A DNA stretch of 64,000 nucleotides from assembly GCA_038087875.1 (NCBI GenBank), contig CM075979.1, forward strand, positions 45,818,001-45,882,000. Direction: 5' to 3'. Under the pieces are notes generated by a model that did no database searches, was not told where the DNA came from, and was given only the letters and a program-made list of their open reading frames with translations. Shown here piece after piece: positions 1-36,465 of the stretch. Source of the DNA: Malacoraja senta. Taxonomy: Eukaryota. Each line of letters begins with the position of its first letter. Position 1 is the first letter of the stretch. Both the position numbers and the translations under genes were made by a program.

Positions 1-190
1 GTGTATAAATTCAGCGGAGGAAAGCATACACCTTACAGAAAAGATGCTGCGATTTTTGATGATGAGTTAAAGAAGGGAATTGCCTCTCTCTTCCTCCCAC
101 TTGTTCAATTTAATGAAGAAGGAGATTATACCTGCGTAGTCTTCATCAGCCCGGACCAGGGAAGTGGCAAATCTACAATGATTGTTTCAG
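1..190 (+). CDS. NCR3LG1-like: 3' part of V-set Ig exon (B7-H6-like)
   Basis: [63 protein letters not shown] has the V-set ASLxL and EGxYxC motifs. It parallels B7-H6 as I recall it (VFEFFGDHQEAFRPGA...[26 protein letters not shown]). Donor G|GTAAAA at 190/191, phase 1. Confidence 0.88.
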
Positions 191-3100
191 GTAAAAACAA
201 TTAACAAATATTTCAGGCATGCACAGTGGTGCAGCGGGTGGAGCTGCTGTCTCACATTCCAGAGACCCCGGTTCGATCCGGACCTCGTCAGTGTGGAGTT
301 TGTACATTCTCCCTGTGATGGGTTTTCTCCGGGTGTTCCGGTTTCCTCCCACCCTCTAAACATGTGCAGGTTTGTAGGTTAATTGGCTTTGGTAAAATTG
401 TAAAATTGTTCCTACTGTGTAGGATAGTGCTAGTGTACGGGGTGATTGCTGGTCGGCATGGACTCGGTGGTCTAAAGGGCCTGTTTCCATGCCGTATCTC
501 TAAAGCCTGAAGTCTAATGAATTTGTCCTCTGTTTATATCTTTGACATTTTCACCCATATAACCATATAACCATATAACAATTACAGCACGGAAACAGGC
601 CATCTCGACCCTTCTAGTCCGTGCCGAACACGTATTCTCCCCGAATAAAATCCCGAATCTCACCCAGGGATAAAACGTTCTGACAATCTACTCTTTGAAA
701 CGGAACACAAAAAATGATTCACTCAATCGTTATATATGTAATTGCAAGCTGCAATAGCGATACACCTGTAAACTAAAAATAAAAATACCCAACACATCTC
801 CACCATGTGTCTACGCAACCTCCGACATTCCAGAGAAAACAATGCAACTCTGTCCAACTTCTCCTTGTAGTTAATACCACCTAATACATCAACTTTCTAC
901 CCTGAAAAGGACATAACCATGGACTGTTTGCCCTCCTCCCATCAGGGAGGCGGTACAGGAGCCTCAGGTCTCGTACCAGTAGGATGAGGAACAGCTTCTA
1001 CAATTATACCGTCGCATTGCTGAACTCGGAGTCCCGCCGATAGATTCCTCCGGTCCCTCCGTCCCCATTGTTAATTATTCTGTATTTTTGATTATTCTGT
1101 ATCCTCTTTTAAAAAAAAATTCTATATTGCACTACTACTACGGACTGACGCAAAACTGCATTTCGTTGTACCCATACTCAGTATTTGTGCAATGACATTA
1201 AAGTTGAATTGAATTGAATTGAATTGAATTGAATAAAATGCTGGAGTAACCCAAGTGTGTAAGATAGAATTAATGTACAGGGTGATTGATGGTCAGCACG
1301 GACTCGATGAGCCGAAGGGCCTATTTCCACGCTGTATCTCGAACCTAAACTAAACGTTTCAATTTGTGCACTCATTACTAGATTTGGATTAAAAATATAT
1401 TTTTAAACGTCCACTAATATCAAATGACTATGGGACATGCTGGCTCGTGTGGGCAGATTGGGCTGAAGGGCCTGTTTCCACACTGTATGATTAACATTGA
1501 TTATTATCTTCACAGCTAAACCACAAATGACTTTATCCGCAACTGCTATCACAATTGAGAATGGGACGGAGAAATCGGTGAAATGTGACAGTACTGCGTT
1601 TTACCCCTTGGAGATTCAGATAAGTTGGCTCAAGAAATCAAAGAGTGGAGAACAGACGATCCTGGGACCACATTTGCACAGGATCTCCTGTTAGAAATAC
1701 AGATGGAACCTACAATGTGTCGAGCCATATGAGGCTACGTCCAACACTCCAGGACGATGGTAACACTTACGTCTGCTTAGTGAGACATAGATCACTTGGT
1801 AAGCACGCAGAGTTGACAACCCATCTGACTGTCAGAGGTAAGTTTAATTTTAGTTATAGAGGTAATGTGGAAACAGGCCCTTCAGCCCAACGAATCCACA
1901 CCGACCATCGATGGGCCAAATATGGGCAGGTTAGTCGGGCGTAGATGGGGTATCTTGGACAGTATGGACAAGTTGGGTTGAAGGGCATTTGTCTGTGATA
2001 CAGCATGGAAACAGGCCCTTCGGCCCACCAAATCCATGCCGACCATCGATCACCTGCTCACACTAGTTCTATGTTATCCCACTTTCTTATCCACTCCCTG
2101 CACACAAGGTAGACAAAAATGCTGGAGAAACTCAGCGGGTGAGGCAGCATCAATGGAGCGAAGGAATAGGTGACGTTTTGGGTTGAGACCCTTCTTCAGA
2201 CGGGGTGGGGGGGGGCGTTAAGAAGAAAGTAAGAGGTGGAGACAGTAGACTGTGGGAGAGCTGGGAAGGGGAGGGGAAGGAGCGAGAAAGCAAGGACTAC
2301 CTGAAATTGGAAAAGTCAATGTTCATACCGCTGGGGTGTAAACTACCCAAGCAAAATATGAGGTGCTGCTGCTCCAATTTGCGGTGGGACGCACTCTAGC
2401 CATGGGGGAGGCCCAGGACAGAAAGGTCAGATTTGGAATGGGAGGGGGAGTTGAAGTGCTGGACCACCGGGAGATCAGGTTGGTTATTGCGAACCGAGCG
2501 GAGGTGTTGGGCGAAGCGATCGCCAAGCCTACGCTTGGTCTCACCGATGTAGAGCAGCTGACACCTCGAGCAATGGATGCAATAGATGAGTTTGGAGGAG
2601 ATGCAGATGAACCTCTGCCTCACCTGGAAAGACTGCTTAGGTCCTTGGATGAAGTTGAGGGGGGAGGTAAAACGACAAGTGTGGCATTTCCTGCGGTTGC
2701 AAGGGAAAGTACCAGGGGAGGGGGTGGTTTGGGTGGGAAGGGAGGAATTGACCAAGGAGTTACGGAAGGAGCGGTCTCTGCGGAAAGCAGACGGGGGAGG
2801 AGATGGGAAGATGTGGCCAGTGGTGGGATTCCATTGGAGGTGGCGAAAATGTTGGAGGATTATCTGTTGTATAGAAACATAGAAACATAGAAAATAGGTG
2901 CAGGAGGAGGCCATTCGGCCCTTCGAGCCTGCACCGCCATTCAATATGATCATGGCTGATCATCCAACTCAGTATCCTGTACCTGCCTTCTCTCCATACC
3001 CCCTGATCCCTTTAGCCACAAGGGCCACATCTAACTTCCTCTTAAATATAGCCAATGAACTGGCCTCAACTACCTTCTGTGGCAGAGAATTCCAGAGATT

Positions 3101-6100: not shown

Positions 6101-9100
6101 TCGTTCCATATACCCACCACCTGTGTGGAAAAAAGTTGTCCCTCCGGTTCCCTTTAAATCTTTCCCTTACTTATGTCCCTCGATTTTGTAATCATATGGT
6201 ATTAACCTGAAATTCAAAGCTCCTCTACTGGTATACTGGGTCAGGCTACATCTCTCCAAAACATGGATAGGCGACATTTCAAATCGGGACTCTTCAGGTC
6301 TTGCATTTTAATGCGAGCAGTTTGGAGCACAAAATCTAGACGTTTGGAACAAAAATGAATTGTGGCGGGAATTCATTCTCAATAGAGACCAGACACACTA
6401 AGTTGTGAAGCAGTGTTACAAAGCAAATTCATCAAATACAAAATATCCCAGATCCAATAGGGAATACTAGTTTTGCTTAGTTTAGTACAGTTTAGAGATA
6501 CAGCGTGGAAACCGACCCTTCGGCCCACCGAGTCCATGTCAACCATGTTCATTAGTTCTCTGTTAGACAAAAATGCTGGAGAAACTCAGCGGGTGAGGCA
6601 GCATCTATGGAGCGAAGGAAATAGGCAACGTTTCGGGCCAAAACCCTTCTTCAGACTGATGTGAGGTGGGAGGGGGGGGGGGTGCGTGGGTGGGAAGAAG
6701 AAGAAAGGAAGAGGTGGAGCCAGTGGGCTGTGGGAGAGCTGAGAAGGGGAGGAGAAAGTAAGGACTACCTGAAATTAGAGAAGTCAATGTTCATACCACT
6801 GGGGAGCAAACGTTCCAAGCGAAATATGAGGTGCTGCTCCTCCAATTTACGGTGGACCTCACTCTGGCCATGGAGGAGACCGTTCTCTGTTATCCCAGTT
6901 TTGCATCCTACACACAAGGGAGAATTTACAGAATCCAATTAACTCACAAACCCGCACGACTTTGACGTGTGGGAGGAAACCGAAGCACCCGGAGGAAACT
7001 CACGCGGTCACAGGGACAAAGTACATACTCCGCACAGTTAGCACCCGGAGTCAGGATCGAACCCAGGTTTACTTTACTTGATTGTCATTTGTACTGAGGT
7101 ACATTGAAAAGCTTTACTTTGTCTCTGGCACTGTGAGGCAGCAACTCTACCGCTGTGCTACTATGCTGCCTATGTAGTTGTTTTGGAAATAGTCTTGTGT
7201 AATGAATATAATTTTTTTTGCTAATTGTTATTAAAACTTATTTTCTTACAGAGCCAGAAGTCGTTGTACCAGGGGGAATAATAACAGGCTGTGTTATTGG
7301 TAGTATACTGCTGTGTTCCTTGATCATGATAGTTGGATTTTTAATGTATCTAAAGATTTTTAGAAAAGGTAAAGTATCCTTCCCTGAACATTCAAAACAG
7401 TTTTGCCTAAGATCGTTTTCTGTGTTTGATATGATATGTTATAGAATGCTTGCCTACATCAGACACGACATTGAGTATAAGAGGCAGCAAGTCATATTGC
7501 AGCTTTATAGGACTTTAATTAGGCCATATTTGGAGTATTGCATGTAGTTATGCTCGCTACATTACAGGAAGGGTGTGGAGGCATGGTGAGAGGTTTACCA
7601 TAATGCTGCCTGGGTCAGAGGGTATTAAATACGGGAAAGATTGGACAAACTTTGATTATTTTCTCTAGAGTGAGGAAAAGGCTGAGGAAAGATCCTGATA
7701 GAAATTGTCAAATTATGCGAAGCATAGATAATCAGAACCTTATCCCCAGGGTGGAAATGTCAAAGACCAGAGGGCATAACTTTAAGATGAGAGGGGCAAA
7801 GTTTTATGGAGATATGGGCGACAATTCTTTTTACACAGAGGTGTGTTGGGGGTTGCCTGGAACATGCTGCCAGGGGTAGTGGTGGAGGAAGAGCAGATTA
7901 ATTTATCTTGGCATCATGTTCGGCATGAGCATTGTGGGCCGAAGGGCCTGTTCCTGTGCTGTACTCTGTTCAATGTTCTATATTTCATGCATTTATTCAA
8001 TACATTACCTCGACTGTATGTGAACTGTCAGATAATTTGAGCTGATCTCCTGGAAAACATTAGTTAGATAGATAGAGTGGACGTGGAGAGGATGTTTCCA
8101 GTAGTGGGAGAGTCTAGGACCAGAGGCCACAGCCTCCATTCTAACCTCCTTTAGAATGGAGATGAGGAAGAATTTCTTTAGCCAGAGGGGGGTGAATCTG
8201 TGGAATTAATTGCCACAGGCAGTTGTGGAGGCCAAATCATTGGGTATTTTTAAAGCCAAAGAAATTGATAGGTTTTAAAGAATTGATAGGTTTGTGATTC
8301 CTTTCTAAAGGTACTATGTTTCTATGTACGTCCTTTTATTCTGAGGCTGTTCCCTCTGGTCCTAGACTCTCCCACGTGGAAGCATCCTCTCCACATCCAT
8401 TAATTTCTATTAACGTCTAACTTTAATAGGATGATCTTTCTTTGTTCTTGAGGTACACCAGCATTTTCACCTCTGCATTTCTGGTTCTTTTGTTCTTGCA
8501 TCCTGATTTTGATGCATTTTTTCATATCCTTGGCTTTATTTTTGTCTCTGATCTACTTACTGATTCTCATGTTATTTATAAATGTGGAAATACCTAAAAT
8601 GTGATGAGATATTGAGCCAGGTGTTCTTACATCCAAGGTACACAAAAATGCTGGAGAAACTCAGCGGGTGCAGCAGCATCTATGGAGCGAAGGAAATAGG
8701 CAACGTTTCGGGCCGAAACCCTTCTTCAGACTGATAGGGGGTGGGGAGAAGAAAGGAAAAAAGGCGGAGGAGGAGCCCGAGGGCTGGGGGAGGGGAGGAT
8801 ACAACCAGAGGGCTGATGAAGCGGAGGGGACATCCATATTTATTACAGTGGATGTTTTATGTAGATGGATGATGAATTTGTTCTGATACTTTTAAAGTGA
8901 CATAAACCTCTTCCAAAAGAAAAATAACATCAAAAACATTTTTTTTTCTAGTACCTCCTAAAGTGTCTGAAATTGCCAAACCACCACATATTATACATTT
9001 GGAAGAAACTGTTCTGACTTGTCATATATCAGGATATAAGCCTGCAAACATTTTGCTTTGTTGTTTTCTACAAAGAGAGGGGGGAAATCAAAGTAAGATT

Positions 9101-12100
9101 TTCCAATGGAGCTCTGCACCTGGCCACTCGCAAGCACCTGAAGCTATTGACCAGCAAAGACTTATTTGCAACAGCGACTCTGCAGAGGATACTTTCCACA
9201 TTGAGATGACAGCTGCTACACATGATGGCCGCTCCAGTGCGAAATGCAAAATTATATTCATCCCTGATATTGATAAAGATGACGGAACTGTCCTCTCTCT
9301 TCACGTTTCACATAGCACTCTTGGAAAGCCTATTACTAAATCCATCCAATTGAAAGTTGAAGGAAGTAAGTATACAGTGCGGCACGGTGCAGCAGGTAGA
9401 GCTGCTGCCTCACAGTGGCAGAGGCTCAGAGTTTGACCTGGGGTGCTGTCTGTGTGGAGTTTGCATGTGACTGCTGGGTTTTCTCCGGGTGCTCCGGTTT
9501 CATCCCATATTCCAAAGATGTGTGGGTTTGTAGGTTAATTGGCCTCTATAAATTGCCCCTAGTGTGTAGGGAGTGGTTGAAAAAGTGGGATAATGTAGAA
9601 CTAGTGTGAACAGGTGATTGATGGTCGGTGCGGATTTGTTTGCATGCTGTGTTTCTAAAGTAGACTAAATGATGTCAAGAAAACAATGATCTTTATTTGT
9701 TTATAAAAGCATCTTACTAAATCAATACCTCAGGTAATATGTAGCTTAGCTTAGAGATACAGCATGGAAACGGGCTCTTCTACCCACCAAGTCCGCACCA
9801 ACCATCGATCACCTGTTCTACGTTATTCCACTTCCTCACCTATTCCCTACACGCTGAGGGCATTAACCTACAAACCCACACGTCTTTGGGATGTGGGAGG
9901 AAACTCACGCGGTCATAGGGATAATGTGCAAACTCCACACAGACAGCACCGGAGGTCAGGATCAAACCTGGATGTCCGGCTCTGAGACAGCAGCTCTACC
10001 AGCTACGCCACTGTGCTTCCCAAAATTACTCTGTTTTAACTATATACTTTTAAATTAGCCGTCCTTTCTGTGATTATATCTCACGAATAATCTGAAATAC
10101 TATGCAGTAAATGTTACTAGTGTGTGCGGGGTCTTAAAATGGCTGGATTGCAGTTACATCTCAACTGCACTAGGCAAAATAAACTCAGCATGTTTTACAC
10201 TGTAAATTCTAAAACCATGAAATCTTCTCTCCTTTTTCATTTCTTAAATAAAAACAGTTGCACCAAAGATGACCAATATTCTCGCTCCGCCTCACATTAT
10301 TCATGAAGAGGTGATTGCTTTGTCTTGTTCTATTGACGGATTTAAGCCAAGACCACTGGCCATCACTTGGTACCAAAAACCCAACAAAGCAAAAGAAAAC
10401 ATGGGATTGAAAGAAATTGTGAGAACTGTGTTTGGAAGCGAAGATGTTATTGTTGGTGGGGAAAAGGATCTGCCTAAATATTCCCACTCTCTAAATCAGT
10501 TGACCAATGAAGACAATACTTATAGTGTCACCAGTTTCCTAATATTTACACCAACGATTCTCGAAGACCATGGAACAGTGTATGTTTGTGAAGTTGAACA
10601 TCCAGCTACGGCTTCAAAAACACAACATCAGGTCAAACTTGACATAAAAGGTACAGTCAGAATTTCTCTTATTCCTATTATGGATTGTAAGATACAATGG
10701 AAGCAGGCTCTTCCCCTCAGCATGTACTCCTGCAGTCTGGAATGTGCCAATGCCCATGTGCTGGGAGACCAACAAGTTTCGGGCAGACCAAAGAATGTCT
10801 TTTACCTAATCTATACGCAGATTAGACCAGGCATCAGGATAATAATTCGGGTGAATGTGCTACCAATGTCCAATCTGGCTTAATATCAACACTTTTTAAT
10901 TACCCTTTCAAAGTAGGTAGTATCGTGGACAGTGAAGATGATTATCAAAAATCACATTTGGCTTTTGATCATCTGTGCAAGTGGGCTGTGCAATAGCTAA
11001 TGGAGTTTAATGCAGATAAATACAGTTTGTATGTTCTCCTTGTGACTGTGGGTTTACTCTGGGTGCTCCGGTCTCCCACACTTCAAAGACCTACAGATGT
11101 GCAGGTTAGTTGGCAATTGTAAATTGCCCCGTGTGTAGGATTGTGGTAGAGTATGGGGTGATCGATGGTTGGCATGGACTCAGTTGGCTGAAGGGCCTGT
11201 TTCACTCTGTATCTCCAAAGTCTAAAGTGCAAGGTGCTGCATATTTGGGAAATCAAACCAAGGCAGAACCTTCACAATGAATGGTAGGGCCATGGGAAAT
11301 GTTGTAGAACAGAGGGATCTAGGAGTGCAGGTGGGTTGTTCCCTGAAAGTGGTGTTGAAGGTAGATAGGGTGGTAAAGAAGGATTTTGGAACATTGGCCT
11401 TCATTTGTCATGGTATTGAGGATAGAAGTTGAGATGTTATGTTACAGTTGTACAATATGTTGGTGAGGCAACATTAAGTTGTTCAGTTTTGGTCACCTTG
11501 CTATAGGAAGGATGTCATTAAGCTGCAAGGATTGAAGAGAAGATTTATGTGGATATTGCTGGGACTTGAGGGCCTGAGCTATAGGTAGAGTTTGAGCAGG
11601 TAAGAGGTTTTTTTTGGAGCGCAGGAGGCTGATGGCTGATCTTATAGAGGCGTCTTTTACACAGGATAGAGGAATCAACAAACCAGAGGGCATAGGTTTA
11701 AAGTGAGAGGGGCAAGATTTAGTAGAAATCTGAGGGGAAACGTTTTCAATCAGAAGGTGTTGGGTGTATGGAAAGTGCCAGAGGAGGTAGTTGAGACTGG
11801 TACTATAACAACATTTCAAAGACTGGAACAGATACATGGATAGGAAAGGTTTAAAGGGATACAAGCCAAACGTGTATTAATGGGATGAGCTGAGATGGGC
11901 ATCTTGGTTGTGGACAAGCTTGGCTGAAGGGCCTATTTCCGTGTTATATGACTCGAACAAAAATCCCTGCAGAATGTCTGAACCTTTCACAGCTTCTTTT
12001 TCCTTCCCTTTCTCTTCAGCAATCCCAGAATGTGAAGACATTAAGTTGGCGCCGGAAATCCCAATTGCAGAAGAATTTGCTGATTCAACCTGCAGGATAC

Positions 12101-15100
12101 ATTCCTTCTTCCCAAAGAACATTACAGTTATTTGGAAAATAGATAACAAACTAATGCAGGAAACTAAAGCTGAAACGGAACCTACCTTAGGAACCGATGG
12201 TCGTTATAGCTTCACAGATCATCTGAAGTTCATCCCTGCAAGAGAAGACCTTGGAAAGATATTAACCTGTAAATTCCAGCATGAAAGTGTCATCGGCACA
12301 CAAAGAACTGACCGTAAATTGGATAAACTAAGTAAGGAAATGTTTTATTTCTTTTTTATTTTGAAAGATTGAACATCGTTGTCCATTTTTGTTCATTTAC
12401 CGAGAGTGATAGAGCATGGAAACGGGCCCTTTGGCCCAAATTGCCCACACCAGCCAACATGTCCCAGCTACACTAGTCCCCCCTGCTTGCGTTTGGTTCA
12501 TATCCCTCCAAACCTGTCCTAACCATGTACCTGTTTAACTGTTTCTTAAACATTGGGATAGTCCCAGCGTTGACTACCTCCTCTGGCAGCTTGTTCCATA
12601 CATCCACCACCCTTTGTGTGAAAAGGTAACCCCTCAGATTCCTATTAAATCTTTTCCCCTTCACCTTAAACGTAAGTCCTCTGGTCCTCGATGCACTTAA
12701 TCTGGGCAAGAGACTCTGTGTATCTACCTGATCTATTCCTCTCATGATTTTATATACCTCTATAAGATCACCCTTCACCGCCCCTGCACTTCAAGGCCCA
12801 AGTTATGTAAAGGAGGATAGTAAAATAAGAATATAAAGGAAGATAGTAAAAGCTTCTTTAGGTATGTGAGAGGAAAAAATTAGTTAAGACCAAAGTTGGA
12901 CCCTTGAAGACTGAAAAGGGTGAATTTATTATGGGGAACAAGGAAATGGCAGATGAGTTGAACAGGTACTTTGGATCCATCTTCACTGAGGACGACACAA
13001 ACAATCTTCCTGATATAGTGGTGGCCAGAGGATCTGGGGTGACGGAGGAACTGAAGGAAATCCACATTAAGCAGGAAATGGTGTTGGGTAGACTGATGGG
13101 ACTGAAGGCTGATAAATCCCCAGGTCCTGATGGTCTGCATCCCAGGGTACTTAAGGAAGTGGCTCTAGAAATTGTGGATGCATTGGTGATAATTTTCCAA
13201 TGTCCTGTGGATTGGAGGGTAGCTAATGTTATCCCACTTTTTAAGAAAGGAGGGAAAGAGAAAACAGGGAATTATAGACCAGTTAGCCTGACATCGGTGG
13301 TGGGGAAGATGCTGGAGTCAATTATAAAAGATGAAATAGCAGCACATTTGGATAGCAGTAACAAGATCGGTCCAAGTCAGCATGGATTTACGAAGGGGAA
13401 ATCATGCTTGACTAATGTTCTGCAATTTTTTGAGGATGTAACTCGGAAAATGGACAAGGGAGAGCCAGTGGATGTATTGTACCTGGACTTTCAGAAAGCA
13501 TTTGATAAGGTCCCACATAGGAGATTAGTGGGTAAAATTAGGGCACATGGTATTGGGGGTCGAGTGCTGACATGGATAGAAAATTGGTTGGCAGAGAGGA
13601 AACAAAGAGTAGGGATTAACGGGTCCCTTTCAGAATGGCAGGCAGTGACTAGTGGGGTGCCGCAAGGTTCAGTGCTGGGACCGCAGCTATTTACAATATA
13701 CATCAATGATTTAGATGAAGGGATTCAAAGTAACATTAGCAAATGAGTAGATGGCACAAAGCTGGATGGCAGTGTGAACTGTGAGGAGAATGCTATGAGA
13801 ATGCAGGGCGACTTGGACAGGTTGGGTGAGTGGGCAGATGCATGGCACATGCAGTTTAATGTGCATAAATGTGAGGTTATCCACTTTGATAGCAAAAGTA
13901 GGAAGGCAGATTACTATCTAAATTGTGTCGTTGGGAAAAGGGGAAGTACAATGGGATCTGGGGGTCCTTGTTCATCAGTCAATGAAAGTAAGCATGCAGG
14001 TACAGCAGGCAGTGAAGAAAGCGAATGGCATGTTGGCCTTTATAACAAGAGGAGTTTAGTATAGAAGCAAAGAGGTCCTTCTGCAGTTGTACAGGGCCCT
14101 AGTGAGACCACACCTGGAGTATTGTGTGCAGTTTTGGTCCCCTAATTTGAGGAAGGACATTCTTGCTATTGAGGGAGTGCAGCGTAGGTTTACAAGGTTA
14201 ATTCGCGGGATGGCTGGACAGTCATATGTTGATAGTTGATAGAATGGAGCGGCTGGGCTTGTATACTCTGGAGTTTAGAAGGATGAGAGGGAATCTCATT
14301 GAAACATATAAGATTATTAAGGTACACAAAAATGCTGGAGAAACTCAGCGGGTGCAGCAGCATCTATGGAGCGAAGGAAATAGGCAACGTTTCGGGCCGA
14401 AACCCTTCTTCAGACTATTAAGGGTTTGGACACGCTAGAGGCAGGAAACATGTTCCCGATGTTGGGGGAGTCCGGAACCAGGGGCACAGTGACGATTAAA
14501 CACTTTTTCTCACAGAGAGTTGTGAGTTTGTGGAATTCTCTGCCTCAGAGGGTGGTGGATACTTTGGATAAGCTTTGTGGATACGGTGGCTAGGTTCTCG
14601 GGATACTTTCAAGAGAGAGCTAGATAGGGTTCTAAAAGATAGCAGAGTCAGGAGATATGGGGAGAAGGCAGGAACGGGGTACTGATTGGGGATGATCAGC
14701 CATGATCACATTGAATGGCGGTGCTGGCTCGAAGGGCCGAATGGCCTACTCCTGCACCTATTGTCTATTGTCTGAGTTCCAATCATAAATTGCAAGAATT
14801 AGTGACAGACACAAAGTGCTGGAGGAACTCAGTGGTTCGGGCAACACCTCTGGAGAAAATTGATGGGTGATGTTTTAGGTCGGGACCCATCTGCAGACTG
14901 TTCTTCAGTCCCAATTCGAAACGTCATCTATCCATGTTCTCCAGAGATGCTGCCTGACCCGCTGAGTTACTACTGCCATTTCATTTGGCCATTCAGCCTA
15001 TCAAGTCTACTTCATCATCGATTCATAGTTGACCTATCTTTCCCCCTCAACCGCATTCTCCTGCCTTCTCCCCATATCCCCTGACACCCGTACTAATCAC

Positions 15101-18100
15101 CCCTGTCAATCTCCACCTTAAAAATATCCATTGACTTGGCCTCCACGGCCTTTTGTCGCAATGAATTCCACAGATTCTACACACTCTGACTAAAGACATT
15201 TTTCCTCATCTCCTTTGAAAAGATACATTGTAGCGCGACGATAATCCCGAAATGAAGGCGAGGAGGCAGGTGTTTCGGGAGACATTTTAATCGCTGTCCT
15301 TCTCCTGACCAGACGAGTCTGCAAGAGAGAGGTTGCACATAAACCCCTGCCCTTTATCCCTGTAGCTAAGGGCCGGCCCCGGACTCATCCATTCCCGTGC
15401 TGAGGGGTTAGATTGTGGAAATGGCCCGACCATTGGGAGCCGCCACATCATCATTTTATTCTGAGGCTGTGGCCTCTGGTCCGAGACTCTCCCACTAGTA
15501 GAAACAACCTCTCCACATTCACTCCATGTCTATTTTATGTCTATCTTTGCTATAAACCAGCATCTGCATTTGCTTTTGTATTACATTCTATCCAAGAGTT
15601 ATTGTTTTTTTGCAGTTTCTCCTCCGTTAATGGACGACATAGAAATTCAACCACAATGTCCCAAACCAGGAGATTTGACAACATTCTCGTGCCATGCACG
15701 TGGCTTCTATCCAAAGGATGTTATGTTCATGTGGTTCAAAAATGAGAAGAGGATTGATGAGAAAGAGATCACTTCTACTGACCCGGAGATCGATAAAAAC
15801 ACTGGCCTCTTCTGCTGTGAAAGTCGGTGGAAGTATATGATTTTACCTGATGATCATCAAATCGATTTCAAAGTTGAGGCTCTTCATTTTCAAACTTCTC
15901 ATCGACCCGCTAAGGTCTTTCACAGCTTAATCCTTGGAGGTATGAGATATAAAGTCATAGAGTCATACAGCCTGGAAACAGGCCCAGTTGCTCAACTTGC
16001 CCACACCGGCCAACATGTCCCATCTACACTAGTACCACCTGCTTACGTTTGGCTCATGTCTCACTAAACCTGTCCTATCCAAGTACCTACATAATTGTAT
16101 ACACCACTCTTTGTGTGAGAAAGTTACCCCTCAGATTCCTATTAAACCTTTCACCCATTTACCTTGAATCTATGTAGGGAATTGAAGAATGCAGGTGAAC
16201 AGAGGGATCTTGGAATAACTGTGCACAGTTCCCTGAAAGTGGAATCTCATGTACATAGGGTGGTAAAGAAAGCTTTTGGTGTGCTGGCTTTTATAAATCA
16301 GAGCATTGAGTATAGAAGTTGGGATGTAATGTTAAAATTGTACAAGGCATTGGTGAGGCCAATTCTGGAGTATGATGTACAATTTTGGTCGCCTAATTAT
16401 AGGAAGGATGTCAACAAAATAGAGAGAGTACAGAGGAGATTTACTAGAATGTTGCCTGGGTTTCAGCAACTAAGTTACAGAGAAAGGTTGAACAAGTTAG
16501 GGCTTTATTCTTTGGAGCGCAGAAGGTTAAGGGGGGACTTGATAGAGGTCTTTAAAATGACGAGAGGGATAGACAGAGTTGACGTGGATAAGCTTTTCCC
16601 ACTGAGAGTAGGGAAGATTCAAACAAGGGGACATGACTTGAGAATTAAGGGACAGAAGTTTAGGGGTAACATGAGGGGGAACTTCTTTACTCGGAGAGTG
16701 GTGGCTGTGTGGAATGAGCTTCCAGAGAAGGTGGTGGAGGCAGGTTCGTTTTTATCATTTAAAAATAAATTGGATAGTTATATGGATGGGAAAGGAATGG
16801 AGGGTTATGGTCTGAGCGCAGGTATATGGGACTAGGGGAGAATACGTGTTCGGCACGGACTAGAAGGGTCGAGATGGCCTGTTTCCGTGCTGTAATTGTT
16901 ATATGGTTATATGGTTATGTCCTCTGGTTCTCGATTCCCTTTCTCTGGGCAAGCGACTGTGAGTCTACCTGCTCTATTCCTCTCATGATTTTGTCATGCG
17001 TACATCATCTACTTTGTGGCTTGGACTAGTTCGGTTTCCCTGCCTTAATCTTCTTCTTGTCTGAAGAAAGGTCCCAACTGTATATAATATTATGGAGACA
17101 TATATAAGGTCGACAGTCAGAACCTTATTCCCCAGGGTGGAAATGCAAAGAATACAAGGCAGAGCTATGAATCGAGAGGTGGTAACTTTAACGGAGATGT
17201 GGGGGCAAGTTTTTTTAGACGGAGTGTGGTGGGTGTCTGGAATGGGCTGCTAGGGGTGGTGGTGGAGGCAGATACGATAGCGCCGTTTAAATTGCATTTA
17301 ATTAGGCACATGGATATGCAGGGAATGGAGGGATAGGGTTCATGTACCGGTAGATGAGATCAGTTTAGCTCGGCATCATGTTCAGCACAAACGTCGTGGG
17401 CCGAAGGTCCCGGTCCGTGGTTTACTTGTAACCTGAAAAATCTTCTGTCCATGTTGTCCAGAGATGCTGCCTGACCCACTGAGTTACTCCAGCACTTTGT
17501 GCTTTTACCGCAACAATTTTATCTGATGAGTTATCCTGGGCTTCTAAGCATTGTACTGTAATAACATTTAATCAGATTATAGAAGTTCTTGAACACACAA
17601 CAGACTGCAGATGCAGGTTTACAAAATGCTGAAGTAACCCATCGGGTCAGGCAGCATCTCTGGAGAGCATGGGTAGTGGGCCAATCTTCAGACTGATTGT
17701 TGGGGGGGAGAAAGCCAGAAAAAAGGGTGGGGAGGTGACAAAGCCTGGCGAGTGTTAGGTGGATTCATGTGAGGGGAAGGGTTTGATTATCAGATGCGGT
17801 GGACAAAGGCTAGGGATGAAAAGGTGACAAAATGGTGTCAAAAAAAGAGAGGTGAAAGTTTTTTTTCAAAGAACTTTGATATTTGAAGGAAACTTTAGTT
17901 GGGAAGTGTGGCGACTCTTGTGTAGGCCATTCGGCTCATCAAGTCTACTCCGCCATTCAATCATGGCTGATCTCTCTCTCCATCTTAATCCCATTCTCCT
18001 GCCTTCTCCCCATAACCCCTGACAACCGTATTAATCAAGAACTAATCAGGTGTAATCTACTATTCTTACACTCTTGTAGTTAGGTTTGTTAGTGTTTATA

Positions 18101-21015
18101 TATAGTAAGATTCTATTAGATTGTATGCAAAAGAAGAATTTCACTGTACCTAGCTATGCACTTGTGACAATAAATTACACCATTGATTTCTCGGGCACCC
18201 TTGGTTCCAGAGCATTGCTGGATTATCTGTTTTGCTGGACTAACAGAGGTCACAGCCTCTGAGAGGAGTCTAGCGGTACCAGAACGGTCCACCTAGGTTG
18301 CTGAGTGGCCGAGACACCGGCCTTGGAAGTTGGCTTTGGGAACAGATCTGCCTGCTGGCAACATGGGGCAAATGCAACTCGCCGGTCGGCCGCCGGAAGT
18401 CCTGATGAGGTCGAGGTCGGCCGTTTCATCGAGCCGAGGCTTCACATTTTTGGGGGGACTTCCCAGGGGTGGGTTAGGGGGGGGGGTGAGGGGGAGGATA
18501 ACAAGTGTGCTCTCCTAATTTTGTCTGGATTAAAGGTGTTGTTCCACCAGTTGCTGGAAAATCGATGGTGCACCTGTACCTTTGAACCCGTTGCAATGTG
18601 AAGCCAAAGGGAGGGATACAGGTGGAAGGGGAGGGGAGAGATAAGAGGAGAAATGGGTGTGCACCAGTGGGGCACAGTGAGGAGAAGGGGACAACTTGTG
18701 GGGGGATTATTAACCAGCATTGGAGAAGTCAATTGGGTTGTAAGTGGAATGTAAGGTGCTGTTATCAGGCAACTGAACCATCCTACCTCCAATTAGTGAG
18801 CAGTCCTGACCTACTCTCTACCTTCACACTATAATTGATCAGACTTTACTGTACTTTATCTTGCACTAAATTATATTCAAGTTACTCCCTTTATCCTGAG
18901 GATACACTGAGGATGGCTCGAATGTAATTAAGTATAGCCTGTCCACTGACTGGAGAGCACGCATACTTTGGTACAGGTGATATAAACTAAAATAAATGCC
19001 AGTTTGAGTGCAATTGTTCTGAGAAAAGGCAGATTTGTTTACGGCAACTCCACTATAATAAAATTGAGCAATATCTAAACTGTTGTCTGTTTTATTTTTC
19101 CAAATAGGAATTCCAAAGCTTTCTGATATCATTCTTGAGCCAGAAACTCCATTCTATGGCCAGCCTCTAGTTCTTAAATGCAACGTGACCAATTTTGCTC
19201 AGAATGGAATCTCCACCAATTGGCTAATGGACAATAAACCTATTTTGAAAGGAGTCAGGAATACAAACCCCAACAAAGAACAAGATGGATTTTATCAGTT
19301 GTGCTCCTGTCTGAAGCTGATACCCACAGCGTTACATTACAACAAGAAACTTGTCTTTGAGGTGAAAAATCTAATTACACCTGATGTTATCACCAAACAC
19401 TTATATTTACCACTTCCAGGTAAGTGAAACTGGTGGAAAGCCTTAATAATTGTTAACAAGGATGGAATTGATCAGTCGGGTACTAAGGTTTTAGAAAAAA
19501 AATTTGGGTGGCACAGAGGTGGAGTTGTGGACTTGCAGCACCAGAGACTCGGATTTGATCCTGACCTCGGGTGCTATCTATGCAGAGTTTGCACGTTCTC
19601 CCCTTGACCGGTTTCCTCCCACATCCCAAAGACCTGCAGGTTTGTAGGTTAATTGGCTTTGGTAAAATTGTAAATTGTCCCTTGTGTGTAGGTTAGTGCT
19701 GGTGAATGGGCTGATCGCTAGTCGGCGCATTCAGTGGGCAGAAGGCCCTGTTTCCACTATGTATCTCCAAGGTCTAAAGTAAAAGTTAATTGACATCTGT
19801 AAATTGTCCCCTAGTGTATAGGGAGTGGATGAGAAAATGGGATAACATAGAACTAGTGTGAATATGTTAGTGATAGGGGGTGGGGGTGGGGGGGGACTTT
19901 AAAAATCTTTCCCCTGCACGGGAGACCTGACCTTTTCTTTGTCGGGTCTCCGTTGTCGTTGGGGCTGGGCAACGTGGAGCGGCCTCCAGCAGGAACGACC
20001 TGTGGCTCCAGTTGCGGAGCTGCGGACTACTCACCGTCACGGGGCTGGCCGAGTTCGGAGCGGGTGGAGCTGTGGTGGAGACAATCGCTGCTGCTACCCG
20101 ACCCCCGGAGATTCGGAGGCTACAACCGCGGGTCCCTGGTGGGAGACCGCTTTTCGGGGTTCCGCAGCGGCGACTTCTCCCGCCCGAGTTGCGGGGTTGA
20201 AGAGCACCTGGAGCGGGGCTCTACATCGTCGCCCCGCGCGGCTTGGAGTGGCCGCCGGACTTTGCGAGCGCACACCGGGGCTCTAACACCAAGACCCGGT
20301 GCGCGACCTTGCATTAACCGGCGTGGCTTTAATGGCCGTGGGACAATTACCATCGCCCGCCGGGGGCTTTGACTTTGACTCTGACATCGGGGGAGGGGAG
20401 TGCAGTGGAGAGATAAGTTTTTTGCCTTCCATCACAGCGCTGTGATGGATGTATGTGTAAATTGTGTTGTGTCTCGGGTCTTCTTCGTTTTGTAATGTAT
20501 GGCTGCAGAAACGACATTTCGTTTGGACCTCAACGGGGTCCAAATGACAAATTTGTCCAAAAGACAAATAAATTGTATTGTATTGTGATGGTCAGCGTGG
20601 ATTCGCTGGGCCTAAGAGCCTGTTTCCTTGCTGTATCTCTGAACTAAACTATCCACTGTAGAAAGTGAGACCATTTCAATATGTGCATATTCTATTCCAT
20701 TTTAAGGTAATTTCCCCACTGTGTCTGAAATCTACTGCAAAGCTCCAGAGGAAAGCACAGTGGCTTCTTTCATGATTTCGTTGACTGAATATGTACCTCA
20801 GGAAATTGAGGTGAAGTGGTTCAAAGGAGAACAGCCCTATACAGGACCTGTCCATAATGGTCAACCTCAGATTGACAGCACTGGCCTCTTCTCTTCAACA
20901 ACAGAAATAGAATTTATTCCAGAACCATCTGATCATGACTTGGAAATCAGATGTGAGATATTTCATCTGGAAACAAAGAAAAGGATTGACCAAAAGTGCC
21001 GCTTAATATTTTGAG
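1..21015 (+). CDS. NCR3LG1-like: Multi-exon B7-H6/NCR3LG1-like IgSF gene, 5'-incomplete: V - C1 - TM - six C1-like domains
   Basis: Nine exons (1-190, 1516-1837, 7252-7368, 8952-9365, 10258-10650, 12020-12331, 15616-15939, 19108-19419, 20707-21015). All visible boundaries are AG/GT and phase 1, and internal lengths are multiples of 3 except the 322-nt second exon. Splicing them gives one continuous Ig-domain protein ending at TGA 21012-21014. That they form a single transcript is inference. Confidence 0.8.
216..515 (+). mobile_element. tRNA-derived V-SINE (HE1-like)
   Basis: A box TGGTGCAGCGG (227-237), B box GGTTCGATCC (270-279), conserved core GTGTGGAGTTTG..GGTTTCCTCCCAC, CR1-like tail AAGGGCCTGTTTCC. 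Confidence 0.85.
895..1235 (+). mobile_element. Rex1/Babar-like LINE 3' end
   Basis: Translates to [26 protein letters not shown]. Tail CATTTCGTTGTAC..TGCAATGACATTAAA followed by (TTGAA)n. Confidence 0.7.
1516..1837 (+). CDS. NCR3LG1-like: C1-set Ig exon (extracellular) with +1 frameshift at GGG 1664-1666
   Basis: Acceptor CACAG|CT, donor AG|GTAAGT. Motifs [26 protein letters not shown] and YVCLVRH. The exon is 322 nt and the ORF track switches frame at ILG/DHIC. The paralogous copy reads CTGGAC where this copy reads CTGGGAC. Confidence 0.88.
2107..2870 (-). mobile_element. Penelope-like element, GIY-YIG endonuclease and 3' end
   Basis: Minus ORF contains [44 protein letters not shown], a GIY-YIG domain of PLE type, followed by the PLE terminal sequence. 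Confidence 0.85.
2873..3630 (-). mobile_element. CR1 LINE 3' fragment inserted into the PLE
   Basis: [23 protein letters not shown] motifs, (CATAGAAA)n tail, and GTAT duplicated at both junctions. Confidence 0.9.
3633..4300 (-). mobile_element. Penelope-like element RT region (continuation)
   Basis: QGTRMGP, YIDD, FLDL and [13 protein letters not shown] motifs of PLE reverse transcriptase. Confidence 0.85.
4366..5850 (+). mobile_element. Inverted Penelope arm (interrupted at 4510-5270)
   Basis: [21 protein letters not shown] and CNRRKCHTC plus the terminal CCAGCATTTTTGTCTACCT. It is the reverse complement of 2107-3880. Confidence 0.8.
4510..5270 (+). mobile_element. CpG-rich non-coding retroposon-like element with LINE-type tail
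   Basis: Homologous to 42443-43111. Ends in TTCACTATACCAATTGGTGTATGTGACAATAAA and (GAACCTTT)n. It splits the PLE arm. Confidence 0.6.
6565..6870 (-). mobile_element. Penelope-like 3' fragment
   Basis: AGACAAAAATGCTGGAGAAACTCAGC terminus and GGACTACCTGAAATTAGAGAAG GIY-YIG tail sequence, as at 2110-2400. Confidence 0.75.
6870..7150 (-). mobile_element. V-SINE (HE1-like)
   Basis: Reverse complement of the SINE core and head (GGATCGAACCC B box). Confidence 0.7.
7252..7368 (+). CDS. Transmembrane exon
   Basis: Acceptor TTACAG|AG, donor G|GTAAAG, 117 nt, phase 1-1. [39 protein letters not shown] contains a ~25-aa hydrophobic stretch followed by basic KIFRK. Confidence 0.85.
7440..8330 (+). mobile_element. 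Degenerate CR1 3' fragments
   Basis: [15 protein letters not shown] and AAGGGCCTGT tail motifs, with multiple stops. Confidence 0.7.
8637..8820 (-). mobile_element. Penelope 3'-terminal fragment
   Basis: GGTACACAAAAATGCTGG..CCCTTCTTCAGACTGAT terminus shared with the other PLE ends. Confidence 0.75.
8952..9365 (+). CDS. Post-TM C1-like Ig exon 1 (138 codons; F-strand Cys and core Trp absent)
   Basis: Acceptor TTCTAG|TA, donor A|GTAAGT, 414 nt. Motifs [10 protein letters not shown] and [12 protein letters not shown]. Confidence 0.8.
9382..9668 (+). mobile_element. V-SINE (HE1-like)
   Basis: GGCACGGTGCAGC head, SINE core and tail. Confidence 0.75.
9750..10015 (-). mobile_element. V-SINE (HE1-like)
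   Basis: Reverse-oriented core and head (CAGGATCAAACC, CCACTGTGC). Confidence 0.7.
10258..10650 (+). CDS. Post-TM C1-like Ig exon 2 (131 codons; both Cys)
   Basis: Acceptor AACAG|TT, donor G|GTACAG, 393 nt. Motifs [27 protein letters not shown] and YVCEVEH. Confidence 0.88.
10920..11960 (+). mobile_element. Degenerate CR1 with an internal SINE fragment
   Basis: CR1 RT 3' nucleotide motifs, and a SINE core at about 11030-11225. Confidence 0.6.
12020..12331 (+). CDS. Post-TM C1-like Ig exon 3 (104 codons; both Cys)
   Basis: Acceptor TTCAG|CA, donor A|GTAAGG, 312 nt. Motifs [21 protein letters not shown] and LTCKFQH. Confidence 0.88.
12400..12790 (-). mobile_element. CR1 3' fragment
   Basis: [25 protein letters not shown]. 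Confidence 0.8.
12830..14772 (+). mobile_element. 5'-truncated CR1 LINE (RT domain)
   Basis: [33 protein letters not shown] and [10 protein letters not shown] motifs, with a (CTATTGT)n tail. Confidence 0.92.
14323..14415 (-). mobile_element. 93-bp Penelope terminal mini-insertion with 8-bp TSD
   Basis: TATTAAGG at 14315-14322 and 14416-14423 flank the insert. Removing it restores the CR1 sequence. Confidence 0.85.
15229..15447 (-). mobile_element. Putative solo LTR (219 bp)
   Basis: TGTAGCG..CGCCACA termini, ACAT/TCAT 4-bp flanks with one mismatch, and GATAAA and ATTAAA on the minus strand. It interrupts a CR1 tail. Confidence 0.55.
15616..15939 (+). CDS. Post-TM C1-like Ig exon 4 (108 codons; F-strand Cys absent)
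   Basis: Acceptor TGCAG|TT, donor G|GTATGA, 324 nt. Motifs [25 protein letters not shown] and FKVEALH. Confidence 0.86.
16172..16918 (+). mobile_element. CR1 3' fragment
   Basis: 223-aa CR1 RT C-terminal ORF and (ATATGGTT)n tail. Confidence 0.9.
19108..19419 (+). CDS. Post-TM C1-like Ig exon 5 (104 codons; F-strand Cys absent)
   Basis: Acceptor AATAG|GA, donor G|GTAAGT, 312 nt. Motifs [19 protein letters not shown] and LVFEVKN. Confidence 0.85.
19505..19870 (+). mobile_element. V-SINE (HE1-like) with duplicated tail
   Basis: Head, core and two CTAGTGTG tail segments. Confidence 0.7.
19900..20583 (+). mobile_element. CpG-rich non-coding retroposon-like element with Rex1-like tail
   Basis: GC-rich body, 22-bp palindrome at 20428-20449, stem-loop at 20522-20544, and AATAAA plus (TTGTA)n. 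Confidence 0.55.
20707..21015 (+). CDS. Post-TM C1-like Ig exon 6 (B-strand Cys absent), stop codon in the last codon
   Basis: Acceptor TTTAAG|GT. Motifs [16 protein letters not shown] and IRCEIFH. TGA at 21012-21014 is followed by G|GTAAAT. 309 nt. Confidence 0.8.
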
Positions 21016-23600: not shown

Positions 23601-23799
23601 GTTATTGAATTTCATTGGAGAGAGGAGGATCGCTCCAATGTTTCTAGAGGAGCAATCCTCTTTCTCCATTACAATCCATTGACTCTGTTTCTCTCTCCAC
23701 AGATGCTGCCTGGTCTGCTGACTATTTCAAGAGGGATTTTGTACCAATATGTAAAGCTAACTTTAAATCTCATCATAAGCTGTGAACCTTGGAGGAGTT

Positions 23800-25345
23800 G
23801 GAGGACCAATCGCTGTAGGAGTTTCAGGAACTAAGGAACAAACTAAAAAAGGAGACCAGAAGGGCAAAAAGGGGCCAGGAGATAGCACTGGCCGGCAGCA
23901 TAAAAGACAATCCCAAAAGATTTTATAAATACATAAGAGGGAAAAGGTTAACTAGAGAGAGAGTGGGACCTCTCAGGAATAAAAGCGGTCACCTCTGTGT
24001 GGAGCCACAGGAGATGGGCAAGGTCCTCAATGAGTATTTCTCCTCTGTATTAACCAAGGAGAAAGACAGTAGGACAGAAGAAATGGGAGCAGTCACTGGA
24101 AGTGTCTTGAGCGCAGTCAGGGTTAATGTCGAGGAAGTACTGAAGGTGCTGTCGTATTTGACGGTAGACAAATCTCCGGGGCCTGGTCAGATATATCCGA
24201 GGACATTGCGGGAAACTAGAGAGGAAATTGCGGGAGCCCTGGTTGAAATTTATGTGTTGTCCTTAAATACAGGAGAGGTGCTTGAGGATTGGAGGTTTCA
24301 AATGGCATGCCTCCTTTCAAGAAGGGCTGCAGTGAAAATGCTGGGAACTATAGGCCGGTGAGCTCAACATCTGCAGTTGGTAAGTTACTGGACAGTATTC
24401 TGAAGGATAGGATATGCAGGCATTCAGATGGGCAAGGGCTGATTAGGGACAGTCAGCATGGTTTTGTACGTGGGAGGTCGTGTCTCACAAATCTGATTGA
24501 TTTTTTTGAAGACGTGAGCAAAAAGATTGATATGTGCACATGGACTTCAGTATGGACTTTGACAAGCTGCCACGTGGTTGGCTGCTCCAGAAGGCTAGAT
24601 CTCATGGGATCCAAGGAGAGATAGCTGAATGGATAGCTATTGGCTCCATGGAAGGAAGCAGAGGGTGATGGTGGAAGGTTGCTTCTCAGAATGGAGGCCT
24701 GTGACTAGTGGTGTGCCACAGGGTTCGGTGCTGGGCCCGTTACTGTTTGTCATCTATGTTAATGATTTGGATGAGAACATACAGGGCAAGATTAGCATGT
24801 TTGCTAATGATATAAAAGTTAGTGGTTTTGCAGATAGTGAAGATGGTTGTGAACAATTGCAGCAAGTTCTGGATCGATTGGCCAGGTGGGCGGAGGAATG
24901 GTTGGTGGAATTTAATACAGAGAAGTGTGAGGTGTCGAACAAGGGTAGGCCTCTGGGTTGTGTAATAGAGCAGAGGGATCTAGGAGTACAAGTGTATGGT
25001 TCCTTGAAGGTCGAGTCGCAGGTAGATAAGGTGGTCAAAAAGGCTTTTGGCAATTTGGCCTACATCAGTCAGTTGCAGTTTGGAGGTCATGTTGCAGTTG
25101 TATAAGACGTTGGTGAGGCTGCATTTTGAGCATTGTTTTTAGTTCTGGGCAAAATGTTATATGAATGATGTTGTCAAGCTGGAAAGGATACAGAAAAGAT
25201 TTACGAGAATGTTGCCAGGACTAGATGATGTGAGCTATAGGGAGAGGTTGAGTAGGCTGTTGTCTCTATTCCATGCAGCGTAGGAGAATGAGGGGTGATC
25301 TTATAGAGGTATACAAAATCATGAGAGGAATAGATCGGGTAGATG
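23800..25345 (+). mobile_element. Degenerate CR1 LINE
   Basis: KSPGPG.IYPR, GRSCLTNL and [10 protein letters not shown] motifs across frameshifted ORFs. Confidence 0.88.
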
Positions 25346-35079: not shown

Positions 35080-35576
35080 AAAATAGGTGCAGGAGTAGGC
35101 CATTCGGCCCTTCGTGCCAGCACCGCTCGGTTTTTAGCTTGAATCAGCATCTGCAGTTCCATCCTACACCAGCTTTTTACGTTATGCCCCCATTATAAAA
35201 CCTTTTAAAATTTCAGTTCCCACTTTGAACCACAAAGTTCCCCACAGATGCACAGTGACGCAACTGGTAGAGCTGCTGTCACAGCATCAGAGGCCCGGGT
35301 CCGGTCCGGACTAGTTCTGGGCCTGTTTCCGTGTTGCATTTCTCAATCAATTGACAAACTAGTTGACAGATGTTCAGTTATCATCACAACAATTCAATCG
35401 CCAGTTCTACATTCTCTACATTATCTTTGTTATTAGGAGTATAAACACTCGATGTGATTTGAGTTTGCGGAGATTCTCCCAAGCGGGAGGTAGTCTGCTA
35501 CCAAGTGCTCTCCCCAATGTTGGCCTCTGTTGACAAAAAACTCTAATTTGTCATCTCTCTGTCCGACTGCTCTCTC

Positions 35577-36383: not shown

Positions 36384-36384
<1 letters not shown>

Positions 36385-36460: not shown

Positions 36461-36465
<5 letters not shown>

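What the first reader, a model, noticed from the sequence alone, without database searches (positions are those of the whole stretch)
1..21015. B7-H6-like receptor/ligand with six Ig C1-like domains after the transmembrane segment (predicted cytoplasmic Ig array)
Seen: exon order V, C1, TM, then six C1-like exons, all phase 1-1 and splicing in frame, adding about 690 aa after the membrane anchor. The TM ends in KIFRK. Established: B7-family proteins are V-C1-TM with short tails, C1-set domains are characteristic of extracellular adaptive-immune proteins (Ig, TCR, MHC, tapasin, B7, SIRP), and basic residues after a type-I TM mark the cytoplasmic side. Inference: this is a type-I membrane protein carrying a long intracellular C1-Ig scaffold instead of a conventional signalling tail. 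It could be an uncharacterised immune signalling architecture in cartilaginous fish. I cannot check whether it has already been described.
Basis: partly seen in the sequence, partly recalled or inferred. Interest (0 to 1): 0.88.

Follow-up and report, generated by a model that had tools for sequence, protein, structure and literature searches.

The report
B7-like gene with Ig domains after anchor
This skate gene belongs to an old, unnamed family of surface proteins that look outside like the NK-cell ligand B7-H6 and carry, after the membrane anchor, six antibody-type domains that should sit inside the cell, though this copy has a one-base frameshift.

Summary
The window carries a partial V exon, a C1 exon, a TM exon ending KIFRK, and six phase 1-1 Ig exons.

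Intronless RNA-run contigs from a close relative (92-97% identical) join the TM exon directly to the first post-TM exon. One of them carries a single ORF through all nine coding exons.

The same V-C1-TM-(Ig)n order occurs in gene models, and one mRNA-derived entry, from chimaera, sharks, rays, coelacanth, lungfish, reedfish, frogs, a newt and a turtle. Nearly all are labelled 'uncharacterized'.

The ectodomain matches human B7-H6 structurally (TM-score 0.9). Five of six post-TM exons pass Pfam C1-set, and all six are modelled as beta-sandwiches. Four of the six have kept only one cysteine of the canonical pair across all 24 sequences compared.

Cytoplasmic placement is inferred from the signal peptide, the single TM and its basic flank. 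It was not shown.

The flaw is that this copy's C1 exon has an extra G (1664-1666) that breaks the frame. This is either a pseudogene or an assembly error, and read laying closed before I could check. The scan has already noted this family at other loci in this genome, and another follow-up covered an overlapping window.

The parts
1..190 (+). 3' part of the IgV exon (cut by the window start). Phase-1 donor GT at 191.
   Evidence: Pfam ig/V-set hits. 97% nt identity to L001 323-517. 97% aa identity to P0169 65-127.
1516..1837 (+). Ectodomain IgC1 exon, 322 nt. One extra G in the run at 1664-1666 breaks the reading frame.
   Evidence: Alignment to the inverted copy 41070-40750 shows a single 1-nt gap. 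The same single gap appears against mRNA contig L001. tblastn splits the exon into two frames.
7252..7368 (+). Stalk, transmembrane and stop-transfer exon (117 nt, phase 1-1). Encodes ...[33 protein letters not shown].
   Evidence: Joined directly to E1 in RNA contigs (record 1). Hydrophobic segment with a basic C-terminal flank is conserved in homologues.
8952..9365 (+). Post-TM exon E1: Ig-fold domain with a roughly 25-40 aa low-confidence insertion. It has the B-strand Cys but no F-strand Cys.
   Evidence: No Pfam hit. AF2 pLDDT 81 with seven strands, residues 57-77 disordered. Nearest folds are MHC class II beta2 and V domains, E about 1e-5. Alignment A3.
10258..10650 (+). Post-TM exon E2: C1-set domain with both canonical Cys.
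   Evidence: Pfam C1-set 9.7e-10. 257 homologues found with this exon as query.
12020..12331 (+). Post-TM exon E3: C1-set domain with both canonical Cys. The donor is at 12331, not 12313.
   Evidence: Pfam C1-set 6.6e-12. RNA contig pieces 12018-12329 are contiguous with E2 (record 5).
15616..15939 (+). Post-TM exon E4: C1-set-like domain, B-strand Cys only.
   Evidence: Pfam C1-set 7.5e-7..
19108..19419 (+). Post-TM exon E5: C1-set-like domain, B-strand Cys only.
   Evidence: Pfam C1-set 7.6e-11..
20707..21015 (+). Post-TM exon E6: C1-set-like domain, F-strand Cys only. Stop codon TGA at 21012-21014, donor GT at 21016.
   Evidence: Pfam C1-set 3.4e-6..
23703..24170 (+). 3'UTR exon, derived from a LINE fragment.
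   Evidence: L001 3007-3468 aligns at 91%. Acceptor AG at 23701-23702. The translation resembles the N-terminal part of a LINE ORF2.

Best explanation
The locus is one copy of a tandemly repeated, ancient and unnamed gnathostome gene family. Its mRNA encodes a signal peptide, a B7-H6/B7-H3-like IgV-IgC1 ectodomain, one transmembrane helix with a basic stop-transfer flank, and then, two residues later, six tandem Ig domains derived from the C1 set.

Shown:
- the exon structure;
- the TM-to-Ig splice and the full ORF in a close relative's transcript;
- conservation of the domain order across jawed vertebrates;
- Ig folds for all domains in the structure model;
- the domain-specific cysteine pattern.

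Inferred:
- By standard type-I topology the Ig array lies in the cytosol, where disulfides do not form. This fits four of six domains having kept only one Cys of the pair in all 24 sequences compared, from skates to frogs.
- The ectodomain is a ligand for an NKp30/CD28-type receptor.
- The cytosolic array acts as a rigid scaffold or sensor coupling cell-internal state to ligand display. It would work like the intracellular B30.2 domain of butyrophilins without being related to it.

This particular copy has a +1 G frameshift in the ectodomain C1 exon. It is either a recent pseudogene or null allele, or it is mis-assembled at that base.
For: - Exons and splice sites.
- Transcript evidence: an X1 contig joins 7250-7366 to 8950-9365, and another joins E2 to E3. 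Logan contig L001 is collinear with all exons and holds one ORF with an upstream in-frame stop, an ATG and a signal-peptide-like start.
- Conservation: 257 representative homologues, most with one internal TM at about residue 230-350 followed by hundreds of residues. Named examples come from Pristis, Callorhinchus (including V9K7L7), Latimeria, Protopterus, Erpetoichthys, many frogs, Lissotriton and a turtle.
- Ectodomain: B7-H6 and B7-H3 at about 1e-28. Foldseek to B7-H6 gives TMt 0.88-0.90 and rmsd 2.1-2.7 A.
- Post-TM domains: Pfam C1-set. Best PDB sequence hits are the SIRP-alpha C1 domains, Ig constant regions and UrIg2. AF2 mean pLDDT is 84.9 with eight beta-sandwiches.
- Cysteine pattern across 24 sequences.
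- Post-TM domains are about as conserved as the ectodomain, 52-62% versus 63-66% mean pairwise identity.
Against: - Topology was not measured.
- N-glycosylation sequon density is the same on both sides of the TM (observed/expected about 1.15). One sequon in E5 (CNVT/CNVS) is shared by rays, one chimaera gene and coelacanth, which could hint at a luminal location.
- E2 and E3 keep both cysteines.
- Two gene models (S. torazame P0011, frog P0022) lack exactly the TM exon. That exon is symmetric, so skipping it would give a wholly secreted chain.
- dN/dS between this copy and the relative's mRNA is high in E4-E6 (about 1.2) and 0.84 pooled over the post-TM exons.
- This copy's C1 exon is frameshifted.
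- No RNA run held this copy's own E2 sequence at more than 0.2 of its words.
Confidence: 0.75

Rival explanations
1. The working product is a secreted multi-Ig chain. The symmetric 117-nt TM exon is skipped, so V-C1 and all six further Ig domains enter the ER lumen together. The TM-containing form would be a minor or regulatory isoform.
For: - The TM exon is phase 1-1 and divisible by 3.
- Gene models P0011 (Scyliorhinus torazame) and P0022 (a frog) lack exactly this exon.
- E2 and E3 keep both cysteines.
- One E5 sequon is shared across distant lineages.
Against: - Both transcript contigs contain the TM exon.
- All 18 close relatives found cover the region across the TM fully.
- All six Callorhinchus isoforms, including the mRNA-derived V9K7L7, keep the TM.
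- The TM and juxtamembrane sequence is conserved to coelacanth, and dN/dS is 0.30.
- Four domains have had only one Cys of the pair since the family's origin.
Confidence: 0.12
2. Two genes: V-C1-TM with a short tail, and an independent downstream gene made of the six Ig exons.
For: None was found. A priori, a 1.6-kb intron full of repeats separates the TM exon from E1.
Against: - Spliced contigs join TM to E1 at the exact exon ends.
- E1 has no leader or signal-peptide exon.
- The joined order is conserved in dozens of species.
Confidence: 0.02
3. This copy is a dead gene. The frameshift at 1664-1666 is real, and the locus is a recent pseudogene in a birth-and-death tandem family. The architecture would then be a family trait and not a product of this locus.
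For: - The extra G is absent from the in-window inverted copy and from the relative's mRNA.
- No RNA run held this copy's E2 sequence well.
- dN/dS is about 1.2 in E4-E6.
- The scan's notes list several sister copies nearby.
Against: - All other exons are open with intact splice sites.
- Polarised by Rhinoraja, this copy has fewer derived residues (26) than the expressed relative (49).
Confidence: 0.5

Closest known systems
B7-H6 (NCR3LG1) and B7-H3 (CD276), B7 family
   Same: Signal peptide, IgV, IgC1 and a single TM. Sequence hits of about 1e-28 to both. The ectodomain model superposes on human B7-H6 at TMt 0.88-0.90 with 28-30% identity. A few frog members are labelled NCR3LG1 by annotators.
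   Different: From my own knowledge, human B7-H6 has a non-Ig tail and B7-H3 a short one. Here the tail is about 690 aa of tandem C1-type Ig domains. Orthology to NCR3LG1 and binding to NKp30 were not tested.
Butyrophilins (BTN/BTNL), known from my own knowledge
   Same: A B7-like IgV-IgC ectodomain, one TM, and a folded beta-sandwich module on the cytoplasmic side that can sense an intracellular ligand and change what the ectodomain presents. This is an analogy of working principle only.
   Different: The intracellular module of butyrophilins is B30.2 (PRY/SPRY). The precomputed Pfam lists for this family show only Ig-type families. No common descent of the tails is implied.
UrIg and UrIg2 of elasmobranchs (PMC12227049; PDB 9dmx)
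   Same: Non-rearranging genes with one V domain and many C1-type domains encoded by phase 1-1 exons, with exon duplication. UrIg2 is among the PDB sequence hits of the post-TM region.
   Different: UrIg2 has a VJ-type V domain, all its C domains precede the TM, and every domain in the crystal structure keeps the canonical disulfide. Here the V domain is B7-like without a J motif, the TM sits after the first C1, and four later domains lack one Cys.
Cytosolic Ig-domain arrays (titin, obscurin, myosin-binding protein C)
   Same: Tandem Ig beta-sandwiches that work in the reducing cytosol without disulfides. Titin I65-I70 is the top whole-chain Foldseek hit, and MyBP-C and obscurin-like 1 appear.
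   Different: Those are I-set domains in soluble sarcomeric proteins. The matches are generic multi-Ig alignments (TM-scores 0.1-0.3). Here the domains score as C1-set and are tethered to a membrane ligand.

Membership tests
B7 family (B7-H6/B7-H3-like) | Signal peptide followed by an IgV and an IgC domain in the ectodomain | tested here: met
   Partial V exon with ig/V-set hits and a C1-set exon. Signal-peptide-like start in the relative's mRNA. PDB hits to CD276 and NCR3LG1 at about 1e-28. Foldseek TMt 0.88-0.90 to B7-H6.
B7 family (B7-H6/B7-H3-like) | Single-pass type I membrane anchor directly after the IgC domain | tested here: met
   TM exon 7252-7368 with a hydrophobic core and a KIFRK flank.
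B7 family (B7-H6/B7-H3-like) | Orthology to NCR3LG1 (phylogeny, linkage to MHC/NCR3) and binding to NKp30 | not tested
   No tree with the other B7 members and no synteny analysis were made. The window holds no other gene. Binding needs an experiment.
B7 family (B7-H6/B7-H3-like) | Cytoplasmic tail without Ig domains | tested here: not met
   About 687 aa of six Ig domains follow the anchor in frame.
Ig C1-set domain (Pfam PF07654) | Score above the Pfam gathering threshold | tested here: met
   E2 39.1, E3 46.0, E4 29.8, E5 42.6 and E6 27.8 bits against a cut-off of 21. E1 has no hit.
Ig C1-set domain (Pfam PF07654) | Canonical B-strand/F-strand cysteine pair | tested here: inconclusive
   Present in E2 and E3. 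Only the B-strand Cys is present in E1, E4 and E5, and only the F-strand Cys in E6. The pattern is conserved in 24 sequences.
Ig C1-set domain (Pfam PF07654) | Extracellular or luminal location, as for all C1-set domains I know of | not testable with these tools
   Topology rules predict the cytosol. The N-glycosylation sequon statistics were uninformative.
Butyrophilin family | Intracellular B30.2 (PRY/SPRY) domain | tested here: not met
   Only Ig-type Pfam families are on record for the family's proteins and for the window's exons.
UrIg/UrIg2 | VJ-type V domain, and the TM after the last C domain | tested here: not met
   The V exon ends ...SGKSTMIVS with no FGxG-like J motif. The TM lies between the first and second C-type domains. 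Family definition taken from PMC12227049.

The most novel reading that the evidence does not exclude
C1-set Ig domains, otherwise the hallmark of extracellular adaptive-immune molecules, work here in the cytosol. They would form an ancient (pre-chimaera/shark split) submembrane array attached to a B7-H6-like surface ligand. That array would sense or scaffold something inside the cell and so control what the ligand shows to NK/T-cell receptors. This would be an inside-out system parallel to butyrophilin B30.2, lost or replaced in mammals and teleosts.
Probability: 0.3. Interest if true: 0.9.

Novelty: new variant of a known kind. Interest (0 to 1): 0.72.

Why it matters
If the array is cytosolic, it breaks the rule that C1-set domains are confined to the extracellular or luminal side. 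It would add a second example, after butyrophilins, of a B7-like ligand carrying a folded intracellular module.

The family is old, conserved and expanded (frog members reach about 1800 aa), yet nearly every database entry is 'uncharacterized'. I found no paper describing it in the searchable library.

It is directly testable with a cloned cDNA: topology assays, interaction screens, and binding to NKp30-like receptors. It bears on how NK-ligand display was regulated in early jawed vertebrates.

Tried and rejected
- **N-glycosylation sequon density as a topology test.** Observed/expected was about 1.15 on both sides of the TM, so it was uninformative. Positional conservation was ambiguous.
- **Whole-chain fold searches.** Apart from the B7-H6 match to the ectodomain, they gave only generic multi-Ig hits.
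- **A relic of the extra C-terminal Ig domain.** I searched 21-26 kb for the domain present in chimaera, coelacanth and frog members and found nothing. The 3'UTR exon is LINE-derived.
- **V or TM exons partnering the inverted orphan C1 exon.** None were found.
- **Literature.** Six full-text searches found no description of Ig domains behind the TM of a B7-like protein. Flajnik et al. 2012 (Immunogenetics 64:571) and Ohta & Flajnik 2015, the likeliest places for one, are not held, so prior description cannot be excluded.
- **Pseudogene decay.** Polarising substitutions showed no excess of derived changes in this copy.
- **UrIg/UrIg2 identity.** Considered and rejected.

Full report
**What is in the sequence**

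The window opens inside an IgV exon (1-190). It is followed by these exons:
- an IgC1 exon (1516-1837);
- a 117-nt exon for stalk, transmembrane helix and a basic stop-transfer flank ending KIFRK (7252-7368);
- six further exons at 8952-9365, 10258-10650, 12020-12331, 15616-15939, 19108-19419 and 20707-21015.

All six have canonical AG/GT sites and lengths divisible by three. Spliced from the TM exon onward they give one open frame that ends at TGA 21012-21014.

Pfam places E2-E6 and the ectodomain C1 in the C1-set above its gathering score. E1 has no Pfam hit. The introns and the rest of the window are mostly LINE and other retroelement sequence.

**The flaw in this copy**

The ectodomain C1 exon is 322 nt, one base too long. 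Two comparisons each show a single gap at the G run 1664-1666:
- an inverted, otherwise near-identical copy of the exon elsewhere in the window (41070-40750, minus strand);
- the mRNA contig of a close relative.

Polarising the differences between this copy and the relative's mRNA with Rhinoraja gives 26 changes derived in this copy against 49 in the expressed relative. There is therefore no sign of long-standing decay.

**Is the TM exon really spliced to the Ig exons?**

Yes, in a close relative.
- In run X1, one 1437-nt contig covers 7250-7366 and continues without a break into 8950-9365.
- Another X1 contig, 1777 nt long, joins 10340-10648 to 12018-12329 (table 8).
- A Logan contig of 3517 nt (L001, from SRR5172151) was found through its 958-aa product P0169. 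It aligns collinearly at 92-97% to the V, C1, TM and E1-E6 exons, and then to a further exon at 23703-24170.

In L001 an earlier in-frame ATG, preceded by an in-frame stop, adds a hydrophobic signal-peptide-like start. This is an intronless, full-length message. It excludes the two-gene reading.

The extra 3' exon is untranslated and is derived from a LINE fragment.

No RNA run held this copy's own E2 sequence at more than a fifth of its sampled words. Expression of this very copy is therefore not shown.

**How widespread is the architecture?**

A full HMMER scan with E2 as query found 257 representative proteins. In most of the best 150, a single internal hydrophobic segment sits at about residue 230-350, followed by basic residues and then hundreds to more than a thousand further residues.

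Named examples:
- Rays and skates: Pristis pectinata XP_051885227.1 (same six-domain form, same C-terminal end), Mobula, Hypanus, Rhinoraja, Narcine, and Amblyraja (a V-C1-V-C1-TM form).
- Sharks: about ten species.
- Chimaera: two adjacent Callorhinchus genes, one of them represented by the UniProt entry V9K7L7.
- Bony vertebrates: Latimeria, Protopterus, Erpetoichthys, many frogs (up to about 1800 aa), Lissotriton and a turtle.

Nearly all are called 'uncharacterized'. A few frog entries are labelled NCR3LG1.

All six Callorhinchus isoforms keep the TM. Two models, from Scyliorhinus torazame and one frog, lack exactly the TM exon. I cannot tell whether these are real isoforms or missed short exons.

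Chimaera, coelacanth, frog and one skate paralogue also have an acidic linker and a further Ig domain after E6. In the form seen here the frame stops one base before the end of E6.

**What the domains are**

- *Ectodomain.* In the PDB its best sequence matches are CD276/B7-H3 and NCR3LG1/B7-H6, both at about 1e-28. An AlphaFold2 model of P0169, built on a 24-sequence alignment, has mean pLDDT 84.9 and eight beta-sandwich domains. Its ectodomain superposes on human B7-H6 with TM-score 0.88-0.90 and rmsd 2.1-2.7 A.
- *Post-TM region.* Its best sequence matches are the C1 domains of SIRP-alpha, Ig constant regions and UrIg2.
- *E1.* The window's own E1, modelled with 12 homologues, is an Ig sandwich (pLDDT 81) with a disordered insertion. 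MHC class II beta2 and V domains are its nearest folds, at weak E-values.

**Evidence bearing on location**

The cytoplasmic placement follows from the signal peptide, the single TM, the acidic N-terminal flank and the basic C-terminal flank of that TM. It is an inference.

Across 24 sequences from skates to frogs the cysteine pattern is as follows:

| Domain | Canonical cysteines |
|---|---|
| Ectodomain V and C1 | both pairs invariant |
| E2, E3 | both kept |
| E1, E4, E5 | B-strand Cys only |
| E6 | F-strand Cys only |

An ancient, domain-specific loss of one partner fits domains that never form the disulfide.

Post-TM domains are about as conserved among chondrichthyans as the ectodomain (52-62% against 63-66% mean pairwise identity), and all are net acidic.

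Points against, or neutral:
- Sequon density does not differ between the two sides.
- One E5 sequon is shared by distant lineages.
- dN/dS between this copy and the relative is 0.27-0.54 for V, TM, E1 and E3, but about 1.2 for E4-E6. Counts are small.

**Mechanism, with odds**

| Claim | My estimate |
|---|---|
| The family's mRNA encodes V-C1-TM-(Ig)n | near certain |
| The Ig array is cytosolic | about 0.8 |
| The array acts as a submembrane scaffold or sensor linked to display of an NKp30-type ligand, working like butyrophilin B30.2 | about 0.3 |
| The main product is instead a TM-skipped secreted chain | about 0.1 |
| This copy is functional | about even |

**Comparison and novelty**

The gene is a B7-family member by its ectodomain and anchor, but it fails the 'non-Ig tail' trait of known B7 proteins.
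- It is not UrIg or UrIg2. Those have VJ-type V domains, a C-terminal TM and intact disulfides.
- It is not a butyrophilin, because it has no B30.2 domain.

Six full-text searches found no description of this architecture. The two papers most likely to mention it are not held.

I file it as a new variant of a known kind.

**Earlier notes of this scan**

The scan's own notes list the same architecture at several other loci of this genome. One earlier follow-up, on a window overlapping this gene, reached the same reading, including 'this copy looks damaged'. I treated these as leads. The points I use were re-tested here.

Noticed in passing
window 40515-41334 (minus strand); exon 40750-41070: An inverted, orphan copy of the ectodomain C1 exon with its flanks. 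The roughly 830-bp segment is 87% identical to 1250-2032 overall, and the exon itself is nearly identical. It keeps an open frame and both splice sites and lacks the extra G. No V, TM or post-TM exon partners it on that strand.
   Followed up: yes
window 23703-24170: The gene's 3'UTR exon is an exonised LINE fragment. Its translation resembles the N-terminal part of a LINE ORF2. The stop codon lies one base before the end of exon E6, whereas chimaera, coelacanth and frog relatives read on into an acidic linker and one more Ig domain.
   Followed up: partly
window about 25900-30800 and 30800-35800: A tandem duplication of about 4.9 kb carrying LINE reverse-transcriptase ORFs. Near-identical ORFs recur at an offset of about 4924-4985 bases, for example 26835-27182 and 31759-32106.
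   Followed up: no
window 55430-56884 (+), 58513-60351 (-), 61787-63574 (-): Long open retroelement ORFs. Two are LINE-type reverse transcriptases. The third is a 596-aa reverse-transcriptase/RNase H-like ORF of another element class.
   Followed up: no
window 36290-36500: A long GA/CT dinucleotide repeat, read as SLSLSL on one strand and RERERE on the other, inside repeat-rich sequence.
   Followed up: no
window 53578-53725: A run of 148 N (assembly gap or masked stretch). It was left untouched.
   Followed up: no
protein P0010 (Amblyraja radiata LOC116984368), not in the window: A second skate paralogue type with a doubled ectodomain (V-C1-V-C1), then the TM, Ig domains, a long acidic repeat and a terminal Ig domain. 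It corresponds to the second of two adjacent Callorhinchus genes, so the two types predate the chimaera/elasmobranch split.
   Followed up: partly
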